From positions 1,736,001-1,800,000 of the forward strand of contig BQFW01000012.1 in NCBI GenBank assembly GCA_020891255.1: a DNA stretch of 64,000 nucleotides, written 5' to 3'. A model generated the notes under the pieces. The model was not told the DNA's origin. It ran no database searches and saw only the letters and a list, made by a program, of their open reading frames with translations. Positions 3,912 to 14,219 of the stretch are shown here, in pieces (the stretch's first letter is position 1; the number at the start of each line of letters is the position of its first letter). The DNA is from Entomortierella parvispora E1425 (taxonomy: Eukaryota; Fungi; Mortierellomycota). Made by a program: the position numbers and the translations under genes.

Positions 3912-5218
3912 GCGCTGGGCGGACCGAAATTTCGCGGGGATTCTCAGTCCCTTTTTTGCCACCAGTGCCCACACCGCCTATCAACATGGCTTCTTTTAGC
4001 CAAGCGAGTCCACCTCTCCCCCCTCCGCCGACTCCGATACTGTCTTCCCATTGCTGCTCAGCTCTTGGTCCGCTCCTGCGTTGAGGAACGCGACTTTTTT
4101 TTTTTTTTTTTGGAAACACTGCTGTGCCACTATGAATCTGCGATTGCGGCTGGCGAGGCGCGAGCCACAAAAAGGTCGGGAAGAAACCATTGTCTGCTGA
4201 GTCCGACGATTGACTTGGGCTAAAGTGATCGTGATCTGGTTTCTCTAGGAACCAAGGTAGCTTGTCACACAGCTGTGTCGCTGGGCGGATGGGCAGTCGA
4301 GTGAAAGCAATGAGGTATTGATTCAGAAGTAACCCATTGTCTCGGCGCCAAGAGCACAGTGGCCACAAAGCTCTGCAATCTCTGCTGAGGACACTCGGGG
4401 TAAATCTGTTCATCCTCCTTCTTCTTGCTTTCTCATTACTCCGTATAATCCGTATAGTTGTACTTGCTTTTCTTCGCGTCTTGCACTCGCCTGAAGGACC
4501 CACTGATCTGTCTTGTCGCTTCGTCGCGGAAAGAACACCCTCCAAGGACTGATGGCAGGCCTACACTGTGCAGACATATAGGACAGTTTGGGCCAGAACC
4601 TTGCTCGTACGTGAACAGCCCCCTCCTCCTCTCCTGGAAGATGAGGAGAACTGTGGCAACGCCGCAATCGTTTCAAGAGCAATCACAAGAATCGCGAATC
4701 CAGGTAGCAGTGCGACCAGTGGTTTTCTTTTTTTTTTTGTTTTTTTCACTCCGAAAGTCGCGAGCATCGAGATTCTCGACAGTCGGGCACAACAATAATT
4801 TCGGTAGTGCGATTTTAGCCGCCTGACATGCCTTGGCCTTTGTTGTGCTACTGAACTGTGTTCCAGTTTCACTGAGCGTAGAGTTTGGGCCGGACCTGGA
4901 TTGGGCCTGTCCCCCTGCCCCTGCGGGTTGCCTGGTAAACGAGAAGGGCGCCACGCTTTTACCGGGGGATGGCTAATTTGCGAAAATCATATAAAAGGGC
5001 GCCGACCTCGAGAAAAAAACTTTGAATTCCTCTTTTCCTCTCTACATTCCCTGCCTCTGTGCACCCGCCTTCCCCTCTCCCTCCCTCCCTTCTCTTTTAC
5101 GATTCACGAGCCGGTCTCCACTCATCCTCCTCCTTTCCGCGACTCACTCACTCACTCACTCACTCCATCCTCGTCCTTGAAGTTTCCAGCTCATTCTAAA
5201 AAAAAGGAAGTTATAACT

Positions 5219-6452
5219 ATGGTTGTCCCCACAACGATCGTTGCCACTCTGTTGGCCTCCTTGGCCCTTTTCTCCACCATGGTCGAGGCTCACTCCTGGG
5301 CCGACTGTGTCGACTGGAGATTCAACAACCCTAAGAAGCCAGGTACGACAATCAGTCCTGGGGGACGACCTTCAACTCAATCGCTTTCTTTACGTTGTCT
5401 TTGTTCGTCTCCACGTCCTCTCTCCTCCCCAGACACCACCTCCACTTTTCTCTTTACATGCTTCCTTTGCGACTCATCAGCGTGACAGGTTGGGCCTGTG
5501 TTGATCTTCCCGGGTACTAGGGGTACCTGTCAAGGATGTGTTTGTTTGTCTTTCATTTTGAGGGTGTCTTTTCTTTTCTGCGACCTATATTAGTCGGAAC
5601 TCCTAAAGTTTTATCTTGTTCCTGATTCCGAGATTTCTTTTTTTTTTTGAAGGGGGGGGGGGGGTCGCTGTTGCCGTCGCGCTGTTGTTTTGATGAGAAC
5701 AATCGCCTTCAAGAACTCGACCAGGACCATTTCAGCTAACTTTGACACATTTCTCACAATCTCGTACAGGCTGGTTGGATACAAACGGCAAATGCTTTGG
5801 ATGGGCCCGGCAATATCCCATCAACTCGGGTATCAGTTTCGGTGGTCTGGACAGAGCCTCCCCTAACCGTCATTATCAGCAGGCCGAAGATTTCACTCCT
5901 TGCTCCGATGGCAAGCACGGTAAAGAGCCAGGCGCGGACGAAACCCGTCAGAACCCCATCTCAAAAGCTTATGGAGGTCGCTTCGGAGCTATGACCCGGG
6001 AGGTCCTTCCTGGTGACTCTCTTTGTGTCCGCTGGCCTGCAAAGAACCACGCAGTACCCAGTGAGCGCGATCGTGGTGTCTTTATCAACATGCCCCCAGC
6101 CCCAACCACCAAGGACCCTAACCAAGACCAACTGATGAAGATGACGATTGCAAAATTGCCCTACAAGAACTGCTCGTTCACCGGTAGTAAGGATAGTAAG
6201 GACCGTTCACCATGCGGAGGTTGCTTCAAGGTTCCGGAGGACCGTGTTCCCGGCAACTACTTGATTCAATGGAGATGGGAATTGAACGACCATGAGTGGT
6301 ATACCTCTTGCTGGGATCTGAAAGTCGGTGCTCCTCCTGCACCAGTCGTCCCTCAGCCCTCAGGCGCTGTGGGCCCTGTCCCCACGCAGCCCATTACCTC
6401 TTCATCTCTTGGTGGCTCTACCTCTGTCTTTGCTGATCTCACCGAAGATTAA
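5219..6452 (+). CDS. Secreted protein with His at mature position 1; histidine-brace/LPMO-like candidate, 2 exons
   Basis: Signal peptide MVVPTT...MVEA is followed by HSWADC. Intron 5343-5769 (GTACGA...TACAG) joins KKP-G-WLDT in frame. A second His lies in WPAKNH and the domain ends with QWRWELNDHEWYTSCWD. There are 8 Cys and a P/S/T tail. Confidence 0.75.
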
Positions 6453-6571
6453 GGAGAAGAAGGAAAACTGTCGTCAAGCTCGTTCTTTGGAAGGCTGGTC
6501 CTCGACAATACAAGCACGCGAATAAAAGTACAAAAAAAAAAACTTTTTTATTATCAAAATTGTAGCCTGAT

Positions 6572-9500
6572 TTATAAATATTTGCCTGCCACAGAAGCGG
6601 CTGCATTTGTAGAGTTACCAGGGTTCATAAGTCCCTGGGCATTGGCCGTTGACAGTGAGGAAGGAGTCAGTGAAGGGGAGGCCGAGGTAGGGTTGATGGG
6701 TGCAGAGGAAAAAGTGGCCAATGCGGCTTTGGTCATGGCTGCATCTGTGGAGGCCGCTGTGGAGACATGTGCCGCCGCAGCTGCCGTTGCGGCTGCCGTT
6801 GCAGCAGCAGCACTGGCCACAGCAGCGTTTCGACTCCAGAGCTGCATCTGCTGTTGATGGTGCATTTGAGCCTGCTGCTGATGCCGAAGGGCACTTGGAC
6901 CGTTCCCAGAGGATCCGTTCAAGCCATTGCCTCCAAAGGGTCCTCCCGCACCAGCGCTGATACCTCCTCCAACGCCCCCGGCATTGCCTTTCCCAAGAGA
7001 AAACGCAGGGTTGTTGACAACAGCCATCGCTGGCAACGTGTTAATTGGTCCAGGAGGTGGTCCAGAAGCTTCCCGGGTGTTGTTCCAAAACTTTGGCCAC
7101 TCTACAACCAGACCTGGGAACCGCAGCATCATCATCTGGGCCATTCCGGGCGAGATCCATTCCTCGTGGTGTCCAGCAACTACACTGGCGTTCATAACGC
7201 CACCGACACTCAGACTAAAGACACTGAAGTCTCCCATGTCGCCCAATCCGCCGCTGCTGCTCATGCCTCCACTAGCATTGGATCCCAAACCGATGCCAGG
7301 AACGCCTCCAGGTTGGCTTTGACTTGCAAGAGCTCCATTGACAGCGTAGCTCATTCTAGTTTTGATACCATACGCGTGGCACTGTGCCAGCCAATCCACG
7401 TATTCATTCAAAACTGCAGCATGCTCAGGGAGTGACCGTCCAGCGTAAGTGTTGAGGTGCTCGGGGTATCGTTGTGGAACCTGGACATATCTCATCTGAT
7501 TCGTCAGCTGAGGACTGGAATAAGACCGGCCACTGCCTCCGTTGCGGTAGAATTCAGAGTGCCCATCATTGTTCATCATCTGAGTCAAGGTCGATGAAGA
7601 GGTCGAAGACTGACTCGCGAGAGAATAAGTGGAGCCACCAATGTTTTCACCGCTGCGATCCAGACTGACAGTACTACCAGCGTAGAATGAACTTCCGGAG
7701 CTAGATCCCAATGAGGACTTGCTGCTCCCACTGTTAAACATCCATCGCAAGAGGCTACCAGGTCCAGTGATAGGTATAGATCCAGCACTGGCTCGCTTGC
7801 TTGAACTGGGGACATTTCCTCCCATCAAGTTTCCGAGGATAGGATCATACATGGACGAAGACTCAATGTCCGAGAGTGAGTGACGTTGCTGCTGGTGGGG
7901 AACCTGTGGTAATTCCGGGCTAGAGGCACTCTCTGACCGACTCAGTCGTCTGAATTTTCGCGAAATCAAGCTGGATCGACTGATCGACTTTTTGGCCCGA
8001 TCCTTCTCTTTGAGGTTGGTATCGGATTCCGTCAGTTTCTGGTGTGCAAGATAGATTTGCTGAGCTTGGAGTTGGTACAAGGACCGACTCATCGCCAGGC
8101 TCTCGTCTTCTTGGACTCCCTCGGAGTAGGATGAGCGCTGCCTTGGAGAAGAGCCGCCGGAAGAGGATCCACCGGCTTGAGATAGCGAGGGCATATTGAT
8201 TTCCAATCCTGGAGAAGACGGAGTTGATTCTGGGGGTGTAGACACTGAATCCTTGTCGCTCGCCCGCTGTGACATGATCTCTGTCAGCTCTCCTGCGTAT
8301 TGGCGCTTGACCATGTCAATCCTGCTCTCCATGACTTCAAAGATATTCCTACAATAAAGATTTAAAAAAAAGTGTCGCGACGACGTTAATTCACAGGCTC
8401 GAGGAAGTGGCCATGCCTCTCATCAGGTCAGATAGTTCTACTTTTGTATTTACCTGACGATAGCACTCAAGGACTGCTCCACAGGGGATCCCCTTGGGAG
8501 CGCGGGAAGATCTTTTGACTTTCTCTTCTCAGTACTTGATGTTTCACTCGTTGCCATCATACCGCCACGTCTACTACCGCTCACAGAACTCGCCTGTTCT
8601 TGAGAAGCGCTCGAAGAAGCTGGCGGGGCCCAAGATTTCCATCCTGGAAGGATTCCGACGCCTCCTCCAATCCTGGCCACTCTCCACACAAGACATCTCA
8701 TGTAATAGAGTCGAACATTGCGAGCCCAGTGGAGAAAGCACTTTTCAAAGACAATGGGAGAGAGCAATGTGTCGAGTGTCAGTTGCTCCAGCGTTTGGAC
8801 TGTTCCGGTCAAGAGCGAGAAATTTTGGTAGATAAAGGAAATGGTCCGCATGAGCGTCACTGTGTGGTCGGACGAAGTCAGGAGAAGATCGAGCGTCGAC
8901 AGAATAAATTGAATGTGGATCGGTAGATAGACTGCAGTGGGTCCTGCATTGAGGGGGGCCGTGGAGAGCTCGCTGTCATAGAGGCGAATCGTTTCTCTAG
9001 AACGTTATAGAAGGGAAATGAGTCTCGCGTAAGTAAACTGCCCGGCACCATCGCATGAACTATGCGATCGCTTGGTCTGAGAACCCACCGTGATTCTAGC
9101 TCGACAATAAGCATGTCCAAGAAATCCAGCAAACAGAACACGCTCTCCACATCGTAGACGCTTGTCCGCGTAACGACTGCCTTGATCCAAATATCCAGCA
9201 TCGCTCCGTAAATGTTGCCATGGTCTTCCATAATGGCCACAATCGTCTCTACAAATCTCCTTGATGCCATATCCAACACTTTTGGCTTCCCCGTCGCAGC
9301 TGCTCCGCCATCCTTTGCGGCCACCCCATCCGCTGCATTAGGAAGTTTTACCGAAGGTGGGGCTGCTGTCCCTGGGAACTCTCCAGTCGCAACTGAAGCC
9401 ATGGCCCTATCTCTCTCAGCTGCTCCATTGTTGCCGTTTGCATTTGGCTCGAATTGCACAATAGTCGTTACGGGATGGATCTCTCGATGGACCAACCCCT

Positions 9501-12500
9501 CAATTTTCGTCAGAAAGAAAGCAGACAGATACAAGTATCCCGGAGATCCAGCATACACCTTTGGTGTAATAGCAGATGTAGCCCAGCCTCCTGCTTGAAT
9601 TCTACGGAGAGGTGCATCCAGATACTGAGCGAGGCAGTGATGGTAGTGCCGATAGAACGCGAAAAATAGCTCGCTATCGTCACTCTGCCACCTTCTGACC
9701 CAGTTGCCAAACATCTCCATCGGTGGTGGCGCCTCTCCTGAAGACATCCTCCGCTTTTGCTTCTCAAACTCTCTCCACCACGACCCTGTGCCGATAAAAC
9801 ATATTGGTGCAAGATGCTCCGGAAAGAAGGTCATGATCTGAGGCATTCCACAATTTTCTCTGTTGGACATAATGAATAATGAAAAATTAGAGAAGCTTCC
9901 TTTTTTCCCTCTCGGATAGGACTGCACAGGTTTTTTCAACAATAGCCTCACTTACCCAGTCAAATCCATTGCTTTGGCCATGCGGCTGATGTAGGATCGA
10001 CTGGCTGGGAGAGCATGGAGCAATCCGAAGGCGACTCCAGGAAGCTTGAAGAAACATAACGCCAGGATTTTTGCACAAAACGTAATCACGTTTGAGTAAA
10101 CGCCCTTCTGATTCAGTCTCTCGATGGCATACTGCAGCGATTGTGTGAGCGTCCGTCGGTATTGATGGAACGAAGACCAGAACGCGCCAGAATCCGTGAA
10201 TGGATACCCAGCGCCTAAAGTCGTACTAGAAGAGACTGAGGTTGTTGACGATGTGTGCTCTGTCACTGAACCATTCCCTGAACCGTCCATAAACGTCCTA
10301 ACAGTCGATGGCGTCGTTGGCTTCGAGATTAGATCCTCGACGCGATCTATAGAGATGGGCTCAGAATTCGTCAGCATCCAGTCCGCGCAGAAGGTAGATA
10401 GCAAGATCTTAATTTGAGCACGTACCAAACTCATCAAACTCCTTCCTAAAATTGCCCAAGTAAAGTCCTGGCATGTTAGCAAGCTGGTTTACCCGCATCT
10501 CATCTCAAATCCTGCAGCCCGTTATGACATTACCTTGTCATGAGGGCGATGATGCACTCAAAGTAATGGCATCGATCGGTGTAGAGAGCATCTGGCAGTG
10601 CAACCAAGAGTGTTGTCCACCTGGAGTGCAAAATAGTTTTTTTGCAAGTTAGAATACACAAAGCAAAGGCCATTCCGATCGCCTCAATGTCACCTGTCGA
10701 GTATGTTGCTTTGTTGATTTTTTGCATGTTGCTTTTCCCAGTGCTGTCATCCAACTGAGCCTGATGCGCTGATGCAGTCTGCATAGCCCTGTCCCCCTGG
10801 TTTACTGCTCTTCCTGACTCCCTGGACTCCTTTTTTTCCTGCTATCCCTTGTTGTCAATAGCCAGCTTGCTTAATATCTCGTCTCTTTTTTTGATCCTGC
10901 TCTTCTGTTCGTCTTTCTTTTTTCACCCATAGATTGTTTTTTAAAGACATTTTGCTCCCGCCCTAGTTCATGTGATATAATTCGCTCATACCATTGCATG
11001 ATAAGATTCCGTCCAGTCTTGAGCGACGCCTCCGAGAGTGAGTCTATTCCGTTTAAAAACAGATGGGGTAGATGATGCCAAAAAGTTAGATTGGTGAGAT
11101 ATAGCGCAATAAAGGACAGCACTTTGCACACAGCAATCAGGGTTCTCCGGACTGCAAGGGCCTGCTTCTTTTGTTGTTATTGCTAAAGGACCCGTCTCCT
11201 TTGTCCCCAAGGTTCCCTTCGCCTCCTTTTTTTGTCTCATGGTGGGGACAGTGGAGGGGTGTCAAATTCTCATGGTTCATCAACTCCTGCTTTGACGCCG
11301 TGGAAGTCAATGCACCGTAAGAAGATCATCAGTCCCGGTCCAGTCCCAGTCCAGTTCCACATTCTGCCCATTTTTCTTTTTTTTGTGCAATTTTCTTTTG
11401 TCGTACCTAAACTTGGCAGATCCTTTCGAAGCCAAGGCAAGAGATTGGTCTTGAGGACTTCGATTCGATACCGATCCTTTTGGTGAAATCTAAAGTGTTA
11501 GAACATGAAAATCACGGATGAACAAAAATAGGGTTATGGAGTGAAGCAAGCAGAGAGATCGATGCACAACAAGAGCGTCATTGTGTTTGTCCATGGTGAT
11601 CCGTCACGCATCGCATCGCCTTTGCCTCTTTTTTTCCTTGAATAAGCGGCAGTCTGTCCGGCGATGCACAAGACGCTCAGAGCAATAGGGGATCTGCATT
11701 CGTCTTCACAACCTCCCTGCCCCCTTCCTGCCTCCCTTATCTCTCCTATTTTGACCAGGGGCGAGCTTGTGTCTGTGACTGATCGGAAACTGTGCCACGA
11801 TCTTTTTTTTTGGGGGGGGGGGGGAGCTTACCTTGCCAAGGATCGCTCCAACACCTTGTATTCCTGCTGCCCCGTCTGCCCGATCCAGTTGCGCAAGAGT
11901 CTGTTTTTCACGGACGATCGCATGTCCGTGCTGGCCGACTTTGAGTGTGAGCTGGCTTTGGTGACAAAGGGTGGGGAGGAAGATCGGGAATAAGGTGGGA
12001 TGATGATGGACGTGGGTGGGAGATCACTGCAGGACTGTCTTCGTGCCATGTTCAAGCTAAGCTCAGGGAGAATGATGGTCCGGGTAGGGGTTCGCAGTAG
12101 CGGAGGGATCGTTGAAGCCAATGGTGGTACAGGAGTACCAGAGGAGATGGAGGGAAGAGGTGGAGGAGGAGGTGTTTCCGGTTCAGAGCCAAGAAACGAA
12201 GAACGACTCTCTGTGGGCGGTGCTGGCTGCGAGGAGTGACGGCAGGCAATGGGGAATCGGGCTGTCGGCGTCGTCGGTGTCGTGGAGAGTGGGATGGATG
12301 AACAAGACTGAGCGATTGTGGTATCAATAGAGAGACCTTGTCCCGCTGATTGATCTGCTCTGGATGAAGCACCCGCGGTGTGGTTCTCAATGCCTTTTGG
12401 AGTATTAGAAAGAGACGATGACCATGAATAGGATTGTGAGGATGGTGTGGACAAAGGCGAGGAAGGGGAAGTCAGCACTGGAGAAGGAAGAACGTCCAAA

Positions 12501-14219
12501 TCGTCGAATGAAAGGAGAGAAGACGCAAACGCTTCAGAGAACGAGAGTGAAATAGAGAGTGAGGGTGAGTGGAGAAGATCAAGTGAAGGCCGTCTAGAGG
12601 TGTCGACTGGTAATGGGGTGGGTGTCAAGACCGAGAGTGCGGTGGGTGGGGCGCACGAAGTGGTTGTTGGAGAGGAGGTCAAAGACAAAGAGGGAGTAGA
12701 GGAGGAGGACAATGAGGAGAGTGGGGAGGAAGAAGGAGAGGAAGAAGAGTGCAGTGAGGCCAGAGCCGAGCCAGAGGACGAGGACGAGGAGGACGAGGAG
12801 GAAGAGGATGGAGAGGGAAAGGGAAAGGGAGAAGAGGACGAAGCGTAGGGAATCGTGGCCGGAATGATCGCGGGCATTGTGGGTGTAGGCGGGCTGATGG
12901 CTTGTGCCTCTCTGTCTCTGTCGTGTGCTGTTGTTGCCTCTGTGGACGTGTCAGTGGTCGTGGCCGTGGTTGCAGCGACACTGTCTGTGCTGCCAATGAT
13001 GCCAATGCTGCCAATGCTGCCAATATTTTCAGTCCCGTCAGTGCTCTTGGTGTCTGGGGAACTCACGCCAGCGCAAGGCAGAGGAGACAAGGAGCTAACT
13101 TGGAGTAAGAGCGAGCCGACCAACGGGGAAGGGGGAGAGCTCGAAGAAGACGGAGACAGATCGACCTCTGCAATGGTGAGGCTATCAATAACGATCGTTG
13201 CGACTGCTGTTGTAGTTGCTGCAGCTGTGGTTGTTGTCAAGGATGTGCTCAGTGGTGTTGATAATGGCAATGGTGGTGGCGATATTGCCGATGCTAACAC
13301 AGGTGCACTTATTTGTGGCAATGCTCTGTTGACCTGCGGCTGTTCTAGGTCCGGTGTATGACCTGGCACGCTCGTGGTGATCGCCTCTGGTGTTTCCTCG
13401 ATCTTTTCCTGGTGGTGGCTGTCTTTGGTGGTGGTGATAGCGGTGGTCGTGCTCGTGGTCGTGTGTCCAGTGTTGGGCTCAGTATCGATGGGTATAGTTG
13501 TGAAAGGTTCTGATCCGTTGCCTATGCTGACAGCGCTAGAGTGAATGTGGTCAAGATGTTCACAGGTCACGGAGTGATCTTGAGATTGAGGATTTTGGAT
13601 GGAAGGTGAGGAAGAAAGAGGAGAACAAGAAGAAAGACAAGAAGGGGACGACACAGACGTGCAGCAGTGGACTGAAGATGTCGTCTGCACCCTGGACAAG
13701 AAAGAGGAGGACGTGGACGACGACAGTAATGCAAAGGGGTGCGAGAGAAGGGCCTTTGCTCCGGTGCTCCGATGGTCGTTACTGCAGTGATTTTGCACGC
13801 AAGTGACTGGCGGTGGCAACAGCGGAAGAGCCAAGGGACTCGTTCGGAAACTATGGTCCTGGGAAGACAACAGAGGAACAAAGAACAATCAGAAACGGGG
13901 ATGCCGCAACACGGGTGAGAGCAAAGAACAAAGGCAAGACACCCCCGTACACACATTCAGTATGAAAACGATGGAACATGGGTGAGTATTTGGGGGTGAT
14001 ATCGAATAATAGGATGGGGATAAGCTGGGTCCAGCATGGAGTCAACCAAACAAGGGTGAGGCATTGAGGAAAGGAGCAGAAGGGGAAGGGGTCGAGGAGG
14101 GAGGCCCAGGAAGGGGAAGGAGACATGTAAGGTATCTGAATCTTTTTAGGTATTGCACCTGCACACGCCATGAAGAGCTGCATTGGGCCTCGGCTTCAGG
14201 ATCAAGATCGCCATCTCTT

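What the first reader, a model, noticed from the sequence alone, without database searches (positions are those of the whole stretch)
5219..6452. Secreted His1 protein with the hallmarks of an unclassified LPMO / histidine-brace copper enzyme
After the predicted signal cleavage (VEA|HSWADC) the first mature residue is His. A second His lies in WPAKNH about 110 residues later. The domain ends in YLIQWRW-x4-EWYTSCWDLKV, resembling the terminal beta-strands (QWxW...E.Y/F..C.D) that carry the axial Tyr/Phe in the AA10/AA11/AA15 LPMO families. The HSWxDC / WPAKNH signature does not match the AA families I can recall. It could be a new copper-dependent chitin- or glucan-oxidising family in an early-diverging fungus.
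Basis: partly seen in the sequence, partly recalled or inferred. Interest (0 to 1): 0.75.

Follow-up and report, generated by a model that had tools for sequence, protein, structure and literature searches.

The report
Secreted LPMO-like copper protein, unclassified family
This soil-fungus gene encodes a secreted protein with the fold and conserved copper-holding residues of the enzymes that cut chitin and cellulose by oxidation, and its large eukaryotic family met none of the described enzyme families I could test and has no published study that I could find.

Summary
Window 5219-6452 (+) is a two-exon gene of Entomortierella parvispora (EMPS_08912). It has a 24-residue signal peptide ending VEA, directly followed by His.

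Three motifs are conserved across about 500 clusters of relatives: HSWxxC at the mature N-terminus, WPAKNH (His111) and ExY (Glu193, Tyr195).

An AlphaFold2 model (pLDDT 86.6) matches only LPMOs at the top of the list: AA10 Z 11.6, AA13 and AA15 10.5, AA11 9.5. Model residue 1 aligns to their His1. Sequence profiles align His111 to the second brace histidine of an AA10. They align Glu193 and Tyr195 to the Glu and axial Tyr of AA11.

No curated family model reaches its threshold (AA9, LPMO_10, DUF7492). A profile-profile comparison shows the family is a sister of Pfam DUF7492 (99.1%).

Some relatives carry a GH5 cellulase domain, CBM1 or a chitin-binding module. That fits a carbohydrate-active catalytic module.

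The family is not confined to fungi. It also occurs in Basidiobolus, dictyostelids, other amoebae and marine protists.

Copper binding, activity and substrate are untested. Public automatic names already call some members LPMO or chitin-binding type-4.

This scan had already flagged probable paralogues of this family, and a DUF7492 gene, on other DNA of the same genome.

The parts
4990..4997 (+). TATAAAAG, a TATA-like box about 220 nt upstream of the ATG (inferred promoter element)
   Evidence: Read directly from the sequence. Function not tested.
5219..5342 (+). Exon 1: start codon, signal peptide, the first 17 mature residues and the first base of the Gly18 codon
   Evidence: This is the first in-frame ATG. 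Orthologues such as P0003 have the same hydrophobic N-terminus.
5219..5290 (+). Signal peptide of 24 codons, ending V-E-A
   Evidence: Hydrophobic core with Kyte-Doolittle hydropathy 2.4. The (-3,-1) rule is kept across the family. The GenBank model starts at the second ATG (5279) and so lacks the signal peptide.
5291..5293 (+). His1 codon, the proposed N-terminal histidine of the copper histidine brace
   Evidence: Invariant in alignments A1 and A4. Model residue 1 aligns to residue 1 (His) of solved LPMOs.
5343..5769 (+). Intron (GT..AG, 427 nt, phase 1)
   Evidence: The junction reproduces ..KKPGWLDTNGKC.., which is collinear with orthologues and identical to public record P0001. A paralogue on contig 1 shows the same split. 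No RNA evidence was obtained.
5770..6452 (+). Exon 2, including the stop codon (6450-6452)
   Evidence: It is 100% identical over its full length to P0001, EMPS_08912.
6048..6050 (+). His111 codon within WPAKNH, the proposed second histidine of the brace
   Evidence: Kept in 217 of 218 sequences and invariant in A4. It aligns to His107 of TtAA10A (PMC6767633) and to the GH histidine of DUF7492.
6294..6302 (+). Glu193-Trp194-Tyr195: proposed second-sphere Glu and axial Tyr
   Evidence: Aligns to Glu139-x-Tyr141 of AfAA11B and the matching AoAA11 residues (PMC12186267). Also aligns to Glu193-x-Phe195 of TtAA10A. Tyr is kept in 214 of 218 sequences. The position two residues before it is Glu in 164, Asp in 13 and Gln in 11 of 218.
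5291..6326 (+). LPMO-fold domain, mature residues 1-203 (interrupted by the intron). It holds eight cysteines.
   Evidence: AF2 model with pLDDT 86.6. VIA-align and Foldseek hits cover residues 1 to about 206. Cys103 and Cys169 are lost together, as are Cys152 and Cys166, which suggests two disulfide pairs.
6327..6407 (+). Pro/Ser-rich linker predicted with low confidence
   Evidence: pLDDT falls to 77, then 58, from residue 211 on. Poorly conserved.
6408..6449 (+). Conserved 14-residue C-terminal tail, LGGSTSVFADLTED. Function unknown.
   Evidence: The motif xGxSTSxFAxLAED recurs at the C-terminus of one Mortierellaceae subclade. It has no hydrophobic end, so it is not a GPI signal.
6521..6526 (+). 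AATAAA, a likely polyadenylation signal
   Evidence: Read directly from the sequence. Inferred.

Best explanation
The gene encodes a secreted protein of about 244 mature residues. Removal of the signal peptide exposes His1.

Proposed mechanism: the amino group and side chain of His1, together with the side chain of His111, hold one copper ion (a histidine brace). The brace sits on a beta-sandwich of the LPMO type. Tyr195 lies under the copper and Glu193 lies in the second sphere.

By analogy with LPMOs, reduced copper would activate H2O2 or O2 and oxidise a C-H bond next to a glycosidic bond. The target would be an insoluble or cell-wall polysaccharide, probably chitin or chitosan, or a beta-glucan.

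Shown here: the gene model, the family-wide conservation of the four residues, the fold, the homology to DUF7492, and the fusion of relatives to carbohydrate modules.

Inferred: the exact cleavage site, copper binding, catalysis and substrate.

The protein belongs to a large eukaryotic family. That family reaches the threshold of no curated LPMO family model that I could test.
For: Gene and signal peptide.

Conservation: H1, C6, C26, C62, H111, C166, W185, W187, Y195 and C198 are invariant across a diverse alignment of 53 sequences. The counts over 218 sequences are.

Fold: the AF2 model has pLDDT 86.6 and pTM 0.81. The 23 best VIA-align hits are all LPMO or LPMO-like chains and all start at model residue 1 or 2. 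They include AA10 4oy7 (Z 11.6), AA13 (10.5), AA15 (10.5), AA11 (9.5) and AA9 (8.9). The top Foldseek hit is an AA10 at E 7e-6.

Residue equivalence: a profile search of the PDB aligns ExY to the Glu and axial Tyr of AA11 (E 8e-5). It aligns His111 to His107 and Tyr195 to Phe195 of TtAA10A (E 0.012). The residue roles are confirmed in PMC12186267 and PMC6767633.

Carbohydrate context: among 74 long relatives, 2 carry GH5, 2 carry CBM1 and 1 carries a chitin-binding module.

Catalytic signature: a second-sphere Glu or Gln is described as important for H2O2 handling in active LPMOs (PMC12186267).

Family size: at least 7 paralogues in this genome and 495 clusters at 50% identity in public data.
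Against: There is no biochemical evidence for any family member, and I found no paper on the family.

A histidine brace does not by itself predict polysaccharide oxidation. X325/Bim1 and some AA16 proteins have the brace but lack that activity (PMC13353379; PMC12186267).

The geometry of His1, His111 and Tyr195 in the model could not be measured.

The alignment to the AA10 is marginal (E 0.012).

This protein itself has no CBM. Many relatives are membrane-anchored, some with WW domains, which would also fit a sensing or copper-handling role.

Confidence: 0.62

Rival explanations
1. It is a histidine-brace copper protein with the LPMO fold, but it does not cleave polysaccharides. Instead it would serve copper acquisition or storage, H2O2 production, or redox or cell-wall sensing at the cell surface, like X325/Bim1 or some AA16 proteins.
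For: LPMO-like proteins with an intact brace but no polysaccharide activity are documented (PMC13353379; PMC12186267). Many relatives end in a hydrophobic segment. Six of 74 long relatives carry a WW domain. In the one case checked, P0183, it lies after that segment, which looks receptor-like. LaX325 is among the structural hits (Z 8.1). This protein has no CBM.
Against: The BIM1-like Pfam domain does not match at E up to 1. There is no GPI-type hydrophobic C-terminus. The axial Tyr and second-sphere Glu typical of active LPMOs are conserved. Structural scores are higher for catalytic families than for X325 or AA16. Relatives are fused to GH5, CBM1 and a chitin-binding module.
Confidence: 0.25
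2. It is a very divergent member of an existing CAZy family (AA10, AA15 or AA11), so there is no new family.
For: UniRef names several members 'Chitin-binding type-4 domain-containing protein' or 'Lytic polysaccharide monooxygenase'. The best structural match is an AA10. The only significant sequence matches to solved chains are AA11 (E 8e-5) and, marginally, one AA10. The Tyr plus Glu pair is the arrangement that PMC12186267 calls unique to AA11.
Against: PF03067 (LPMO_10) gives nothing for this protein and only 1 of 27 relatives, at E 0.011. A whole-genome scan with PF03067 finds a different locus only. AA9 hits are below threshold. The AA11 match covers only about 37 C-terminal residues. 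Structural Z scores of 9.5-11.6 are nearly equal across AA10, AA13, AA15 and AA11, with 10-17% identity. The clear sequence relative is DUF7492.
Confidence: 0.1
3. It is a secreted or cell-wall structural beta-sandwich protein without a metal site, and the conserved His, His and Tyr serve folding only.
For: Many fibronectin- or Ig-like domains appear lower in the structural list (Z 5-6). The protein is rich in disulfides.
Against: His is invariant at exactly the first mature position. The second His and Tyr are also invariant, and they align to the copper ligands of solved LPMOs. All of the top 23 structural hits are LPMO or LPMO-like chains.
Confidence: 0.03

Closest known systems
Pfam DUF7492 (PF24320), an uncharacterised fungal family of secreted HSWLDC-type proteins
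   Same: The profile-profile match has 99.1% probability and E 6e-19 over 187 columns. His1 (AHSWxDC), the second His (WPAKNH against WQxxGH) and the ExY-[ST]-[ST]-C motif are all in register. The same genome has DUF7492 genes of its own.
   Different: The window protein scores only 9.8-11.6 bits against a cut-off of 27, and only over the C-terminal motif. It carries extra loops, including the RHYQQ and GADETRQNPISKAYGG regions. DUF7492 itself has no known function.
AA10 LPMOs (e.g. ScLPMO10C 4OY7, TtAA10A 6RW7)
   Same: This is the best structural match: Z 11.6, 158 residues, rmsd 3.3, His1 on His1. A marginal sequence alignment (E 0.012) puts His111 on His107 and Glu193/Tyr195 on Glu193/Phe195. 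The N-terminal H-S-W resembles the H-G-aromatic start common in AA10 (the AA10 motif is from my own knowledge).
   Different: Identity is 10-17%. There is no PF03067 match. The axial residue is Tyr rather than the usual Phe. The position two residues before the second His is Lys, not the usual Ala or Gly. The disulfide pattern differs.
AA11 LPMOs (AoAA11 4MAH, AfAA11B 9EXJ, AfAA11A 7P3U), chitin-active fungal enzymes
   Same: These are the only solved chains hit at a significant sequence E-value (8e-5 to 4e-4). The match is on the strand pair GxYxxxWxW...ExYxxC. They share the axial Tyr plus second-sphere Glu pair, which PMC12186267 calls unique to AA11. Structural Z is 9.4-9.5.
   Different: The match covers only about 37 residues. 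The rest of the domain shows no detectable sequence similarity. AA11 is smaller (about 140-150 aligned residues) and has its second His at position 60-61.
AA15 and AA13 LPMOs (TdAA15A 5MSZ, AoAA13 4OPB)
   Same: Same fold, with Z 10.5 each and His1 aligned to His1. AA15 is the other eukaryotic, non-Dikarya LPMO family.
   Different: There is no sequence match at E up to 10. The arthropod and rotifer LPMO clusters in the Atlas list carry PF03067, and this family does not.
X325 / Bim1-like copper-binding proteins
   Same: LPMO-like fold with a histidine brace and a cell-surface location (Z 8.1).
   Different: There is no BIM1-like Pfam match and no GPI signal. Per the review, X325 proteins have an additional Asp ligand to Cu(II) and a GPI anchor (PMC13353379). 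Here the canonical Tyr and Glu are conserved.

Membership tests
LPMO (functional class: histidine-brace copper polysaccharide oxidases) | Secretion signal whose cleavage leaves His as residue 1 | tested here: met
   The presequence obeys the (-3,-1) rule in this protein and in 208 of 212 relatives, and His is always the next residue. SignalP and protein N-terminal sequencing were not available.
LPMO (functional class) | Second conserved histidine that completes the brace | tested here: met
   His111 is kept in 217 of 218 sequences. It aligns to His107 of TtAA10A and to the DUF7492 histidine.
LPMO (functional class) | Axial Tyr or Phe on a C-terminal strand, with a Glu or Gln two residues before it | tested here: met
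   Tyr195 is kept in 214 of 218 sequences. The position two residues before it is Glu in 164 and Gln in 11 of 218. Both residues align to Glu139/Tyr141 of AfAA11B and to Glu193/Phe195 of TtAA10A.
LPMO (functional class) | Immunoglobulin- or fibronectin-like beta-sandwich fold of solved LPMOs | tested here: met
   AF2 model with pLDDT 86.6. The top 23 VIA-align hits are all LPMO or LPMO-like chains, Z 7.4-11.6. Foldseek probability is 1.00 for AA10.
LPMO (functional class) | His1, the second His and Tyr converge on one site in three dimensions | not testable with these tools
Convergence is inferred only from the residue-level sequence alignments and from residue 1 aligning to residue 1.
LPMO (functional class) | Copper binding and oxidative cleavage of a polysaccharide | not testable with these tools
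   This needs expression, ICP or EPR, and product analysis.
AA10 / AA15 (Pfam LPMO_10, PF03067) | Match to the family HMM above its gathering score | tested here: not met
   No match for the window protein at E up to 1. Only 1 of 27 relatives matches, at E 0.011. A genome-wide PF03067 scan hits only another locus.
AA9 (Pfam PF03443) | Match to the family HMM above its gathering score | tested here: not met
   No match for the window protein. Six of 27 relatives give weak hits, best E 2.6e-4.
AA11 | Sequence similarity over the catalytic domain to founding members (4MAH, 7P3U, 9EXJ) | tested here: not met
   Only a local match of about 37 residues at the C-terminal motif, E 8e-5 to 4e-4.
AA13, AA14, AA15, AA16, AA17 (founding structures in the PDB) | Detectable sequence similarity to a solved member | tested here: not met
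   Family profiles A1 and A4 searched against all PDB sequences at E up to 10 hit none of them. The similarity is structural only, Z 7.4-10.5. The CAZy/dbCAN HMMs themselves were not available.
Pfam DUF7492 (PF24320) | Match above the gathering score of 27 bits | tested here: not met
   Scores are 9.8-11.6 bits for this protein. Homology at superfamily level is nonetheless clear (hhalign 99.1%).
X325 / BIM1-like (PF20238) | HMM match and a GPI-anchor signal | tested here: not met
   No PF20238 match. The C-terminus is acidic, not hydrophobic.

The most novel reading that the evidence does not exclude
This family, together with DUF7492, could be a new and ancient eukaryotic LPMO family that would merit its own CAZy AA number. 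It would combine an AA10-like scaffold with the Tyr/Glu copper environment so far described only for AA11. Its members act on cell-wall polysaccharides, as suggested by the GH5, CBM1 and chitin-binding fusions. Some lineages may have turned the domain into the ectodomain of membrane receptors with cytoplasmic WW domains.
Probability: 0.4. Interest if true: 0.75.

Novelty: new variant of a known kind. Interest (0 to 1): 0.6.

Why it matters
Each new LPMO family has brought new substrates, new copper chemistry and new biology. Examples are starch for AA13, xylan for AA14, insect moulting for AA15 and pectin with oomycete virulence for AA17.

This family is large: 495 clusters at 50% identity. 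It is expanded in Mortierellaceae, with at least 7 genes in this genome. It also spans fungi, amoebae and marine protists, lineages whose oxidative carbohydrate biology has had little study.

Its Tyr plus Glu copper site offers a second, independent scaffold for studying an arrangement thought to be unique to AA11.

The gene is short and has a single intron, so it is easy to express. The claim can therefore be tested directly.

Tried and rejected
- The joined 268-residue product was not built or typed. Exons were searched separately by reference. The mature protein was analysed through the public record P0001:5-248, which is the same product starting from the second ATG.
- NCBIfam: no family matched. 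A language-model lead to the bacterial 'SCE4755 family polysaccharide monooxygenase-like' group (score 0.88) was not borne out. Only 1 of 53 members matched, at E 0.12.
- AA18 was considered. Two 2026 papers mention it; one lists it among the LPMO families and cites Santos et al. 2025. I take that work to be the metagenomic cellulose oxidase CelOCE described in PMC13353379, which has a different kind of protein architecture (my own inference). Nothing in the sequence or fold searches points there.
- Genomic neighbours gave no functional context. The ORFs at 200-2329, 6572-8332, 8878-9951 and 11828-13888 have no informative Pfam match.
- Literature searches for Mortierella or Mortierellomycota with LPMO, DUF7492, Dictyostelium, new LPMO families, and AlphaFold-based mining found no description of this family.
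- Measuring the His-His-Tyr geometry was not possible, because model coordinates are not exposed.

Full report
**The gene**

Window 5219-6452 (+) holds a two-exon gene. Exon 1 runs from 5219 to 5342. It starts at the first in-frame ATG and encodes 41 codons plus one base. A GT..AG intron of 427 nt follows (5343-5769). Exon 2 (5770-6452) ends in TAA.

Exon 2 is 100% identical to the public protein EMPS_08912 of Entomortierella parvispora, stored as P0001. So the window comes from that Mortierellaceae soil fungus.

The public model uses the same splice junction but starts at the second ATG (5279, 'MVEAHSW..'). It therefore lacks the signal peptide. Orthologues such as P0003 carry a full hydrophobic N-terminus that is collinear with the product of the 5219 ATG.

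Exons were searched by reference. The mature protein was handled as P0001:5-248.

A TATA-like box (4990-4997) and an AATAAA (6521-6526) flank the gene. Their roles are inferred.

**Checking the observation**

- VEA, then HSWADC, with the His codon at 5291-5293.
- WPAKNH, with His at mature position 111 (6048-6050).
- YLIQWRW-ELNDH-EWYTSCWDLKV. The spacer is five residues, not four.

The pattern is not chance. Of 257 relatives that begin with Met, 212 have the H[ST][WFY]xxC histidine directly after a presequence of 12-44 residues (median 23). These presequences have a strong hydrophobic core. Position -1 is A, S or G in 208 of the 212, and position -3 is V, A, T, I or S.

Over 218 domain sequences, His111 is kept in 217 and Tyr195 in 214. 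The residue two positions before the Tyr is Glu in 164, Asp in 13 and Gln in 11. His1 is 218 of 218 only by construction, because the set was selected on the N-terminal motif.

In a deliberately diverse alignment of 53 sequences with 24-78% identity to the window protein, the only invariant columns are H1, C6, C26, C62, H111, C166, W185, W187, Y195 and C198.

Cys103 and Cys169 are lost together, and so are Cys152 and Cys166. This suggests two of the four disulfides.

**Fold**

An AlphaFold2 model of the mature protein, built on a 61-sequence alignment, has mean pLDDT 86.6 and pTM 0.81. Confidence falls after about residue 210, where the Pro-rich linker and the tail lie.

An exhaustive structural comparison against 48,161 PDB representatives puts 23 LPMO or LPMO-like chains on top:

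| Family and entry | Z |
|---|---|
| AA10 ScLPMO10C (4OY7) | 11.6 (158 residues, rmsd 3.3) |
| AA13 (4OPB) | 10.5 |
| AA15 (5MSZ) | 10.5 |
| Further AA10s | 9.0-10.2 |
| AA11 | 9.4-9.5 |
| AA9 | 8.1-8.9 |
| X325 | 8.1 |
| AA16 | 7.5 |
| AA14 | 7.4 |

Unrelated Ig- or FnIII-like domains follow only at Z 5-6. In all of these rows but one (LaX325, which starts at residue 2), model residue 1 is aligned to the chain's N-terminal His.

Foldseek agrees: AA10 at E 7e-6 with probability 1.00. No single family stands out, and identities are 8-17%.

**Residue equivalence**

I used sequence profiles against all PDB chains instead.

The diverse family profile hits the three AA11 structures at E 8e-5 to 4e-4. 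The match lies on the motif GxYxxxWxW..ExYxxC (weaker). By position, Glu193 and Tyr195 fall on Glu139 and Tyr141 of AfAA11B. PMC12186267 names Glu139 as the second-sphere glutamate next to the axial tyrosine. It says this Tyr plus Glu combination is unique to AA11.

The same profile aligns residues 39-186 to TtAA10A (6RW7) at a marginal E of 0.012. His111 falls on His107, and Glu193/Tyr195 fall on Glu193/Phe195. PMC6767633 confirms that His1 and His107 form the brace and that Phe195 is axial.

So all four active-site positions have counterparts in solved, active LPMOs.

**Family placement**

No curated model reaches its threshold.
- Pfam gives only DUF7492 at 9.8-11.6 bits, against a cut-off of 27.
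- Among 27 relatives, AA9 (6 members, best E 2.6e-4) and LPMO_10 (1 member, E 0.011) appear only weakly.
- A six-frame scan of the whole genome with LPMO_10 finds one other locus and none of this family.
- NCBIfam finds nothing.
- The family profiles hit no solved AA13, AA14, AA15, AA16 or AA17 chain at E up to 10.

The one clear relative is Pfam DUF7492. The same genome has genuine DUF7492 genes that start ..A|HSWLDC... A profile-profile comparison of the two families gives 99.1% probability and E 6e-19. His1, the second His and the ExY motif are all in register. DUF7492 itself is only weakly similar to AA11. I found no paper that mentions it.

The window protein thus belongs to an unnamed sister family of DUF7492, within an 'HSWxxC' superfamily of LPMO-fold proteins.

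**Distribution and architecture**

An exhaustive HMM search of 1.84 billion representatives finds 495 clusters at E up to 1e-3, of which 242 are at E up to 1e-10. Most full-length members carry the three motifs.

Named members come from these groups:
- many Mortierellaceae
- Basidiobolus
- the dictyostelids Acytostelium and Cavenderia
- the amoeba Paradermamoeba
- MMETSP marine protists
- Tara Oceans and other metagenomes

The E. parvispora genome has at least seven paralogues. These include two tandem pairs and one copy with the same exon split.

Among 74 long relatives:
- two have a C-terminal GH5 cellulase domain (E 4e-45 and 5.5e-50)
- two have a CBM1
- one has a chitin-binding module
- six have a WW domain

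Many also end in a hydrophobic, membrane-anchor-like segment. Fusion to glycoside hydrolases and CBMs is the classical signature of a carbohydrate-active catalytic module.

**Mechanism and its rivals**

The best-supported reading is a secreted mono-copper histidine-brace protein that oxidises a polysaccharide, as LPMOs do. The conserved Glu and Tyr argue for catalysis rather than mere copper binding. The CBM and GH5 fusions argue for carbohydrate substrates, possibly different ones in different clades.

For this CBM-less Mortierella protein, the substrate is a guess. The fungus's own chitin or chitosan wall, or environmental chitin or beta-glucan, are the candidates.

The main rival is a non-catalytic LPMO-like copper protein for copper handling, H2O2 production or sensing. 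It cannot be excluded, because such proteins exist and many relatives look like membrane receptors.

A divergent AA10, AA11 or AA15 member is unlikely on the HMM tests. It could only be settled with CAZy's own models.

**Novelty**

Automatic annotation already calls some members 'Chitin-binding type-4 domain-containing protein' or 'Lytic polysaccharide monooxygenase'. The LPMO likeness is therefore not a new idea.

I found no experimental or descriptive paper on the family.

Earlier notes of this scan describe what are, by matching lengths and coordinates, probably paralogues of this gene (s1-173329, s1-190132, s1-192339). Another note describes a DUF7492 gene (s1-176350). They reach the same conclusion.

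**What could not be done**

SignalP, dbCAN, the model geometry and all biochemistry are also untested.

Noticed in passing
window 5219-5281: The public gene model (EMPS_08912, 248 aa) starts at the second ATG (5279). It therefore lacks the signal peptide that orthologues have. The first in-frame ATG at 5219 restores it, giving 268 aa.
   Followed up: yes
window 6408-6449: A 14-residue C-terminal tail (LGGSTSVFADLTED) follows a Pro-rich linker. It is conserved as xGxSTSxFAxLAED at the very end of one Mortierellaceae subclade and is absent from the short, basic-tailed subclade. It is not a GPI signal, and its function is unknown.
   Followed up: partly
P0183 and five other relatives; hydrophobic segments listed: Some family members look like type I membrane proteins. 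They have an LPMO-like ectodomain, a hydrophobic segment and then a WW domain (P0183: segment near residue 393, WW at 506-536). This suggests a receptor-like use of the domain.
   Followed up: partly
P0218 (578 aa) and P0244 (641 aa), from metagenome contigs: In these proteins the His1 domain is fused through a Pro-rich linker to a GH5 cellulase domain. P0200 and P0265 carry CBM1. P0233 carries a chitin-binding (hevein-type) module.
   Followed up: yes
G000 C2:1361956-1366043 and C14:459640-464820: There are two tandem pairs of paralogues of this gene in the same genome. Further single copies lie at C12:13101-13817 and C1:1051324-1052470, and the C1 copy has the same exon split.
   Followed up: partly
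G000 C3:445650-446240 (L001) and C2:2991120-2991716 (L003): These are genuine DUF7492 genes with a ..A|HSWLDC.. start, a WQxxGH second histidine and an EEYSTC motif. They are sisters of the family studied here.
   Followed up: yes
G000 C2:3480049-3480336 (-): This is the only match in the genome to the classical LPMO_10 (AA10/AA15) Pfam model, at 26.2 bits. I did not examine it further.
   Followed up: no
window 5637-5665: Inside the intron, a run of T is followed by a run of about 14 G (..tttttttttttgaagggggggggggggtc..). This homopolymer tract could trouble assembly or polymerases.
   Followed up: no
window 6572-8332 (-): A convergent neighbour encodes a 586-residue, low-complexity Ser/Gly/Ala/Gln-rich protein with no Pfam match. 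Its stop codon lies about 120 nt from the stop of the LPMO-like gene, so the two 3' ends must nearly abut.
   Followed up: partly
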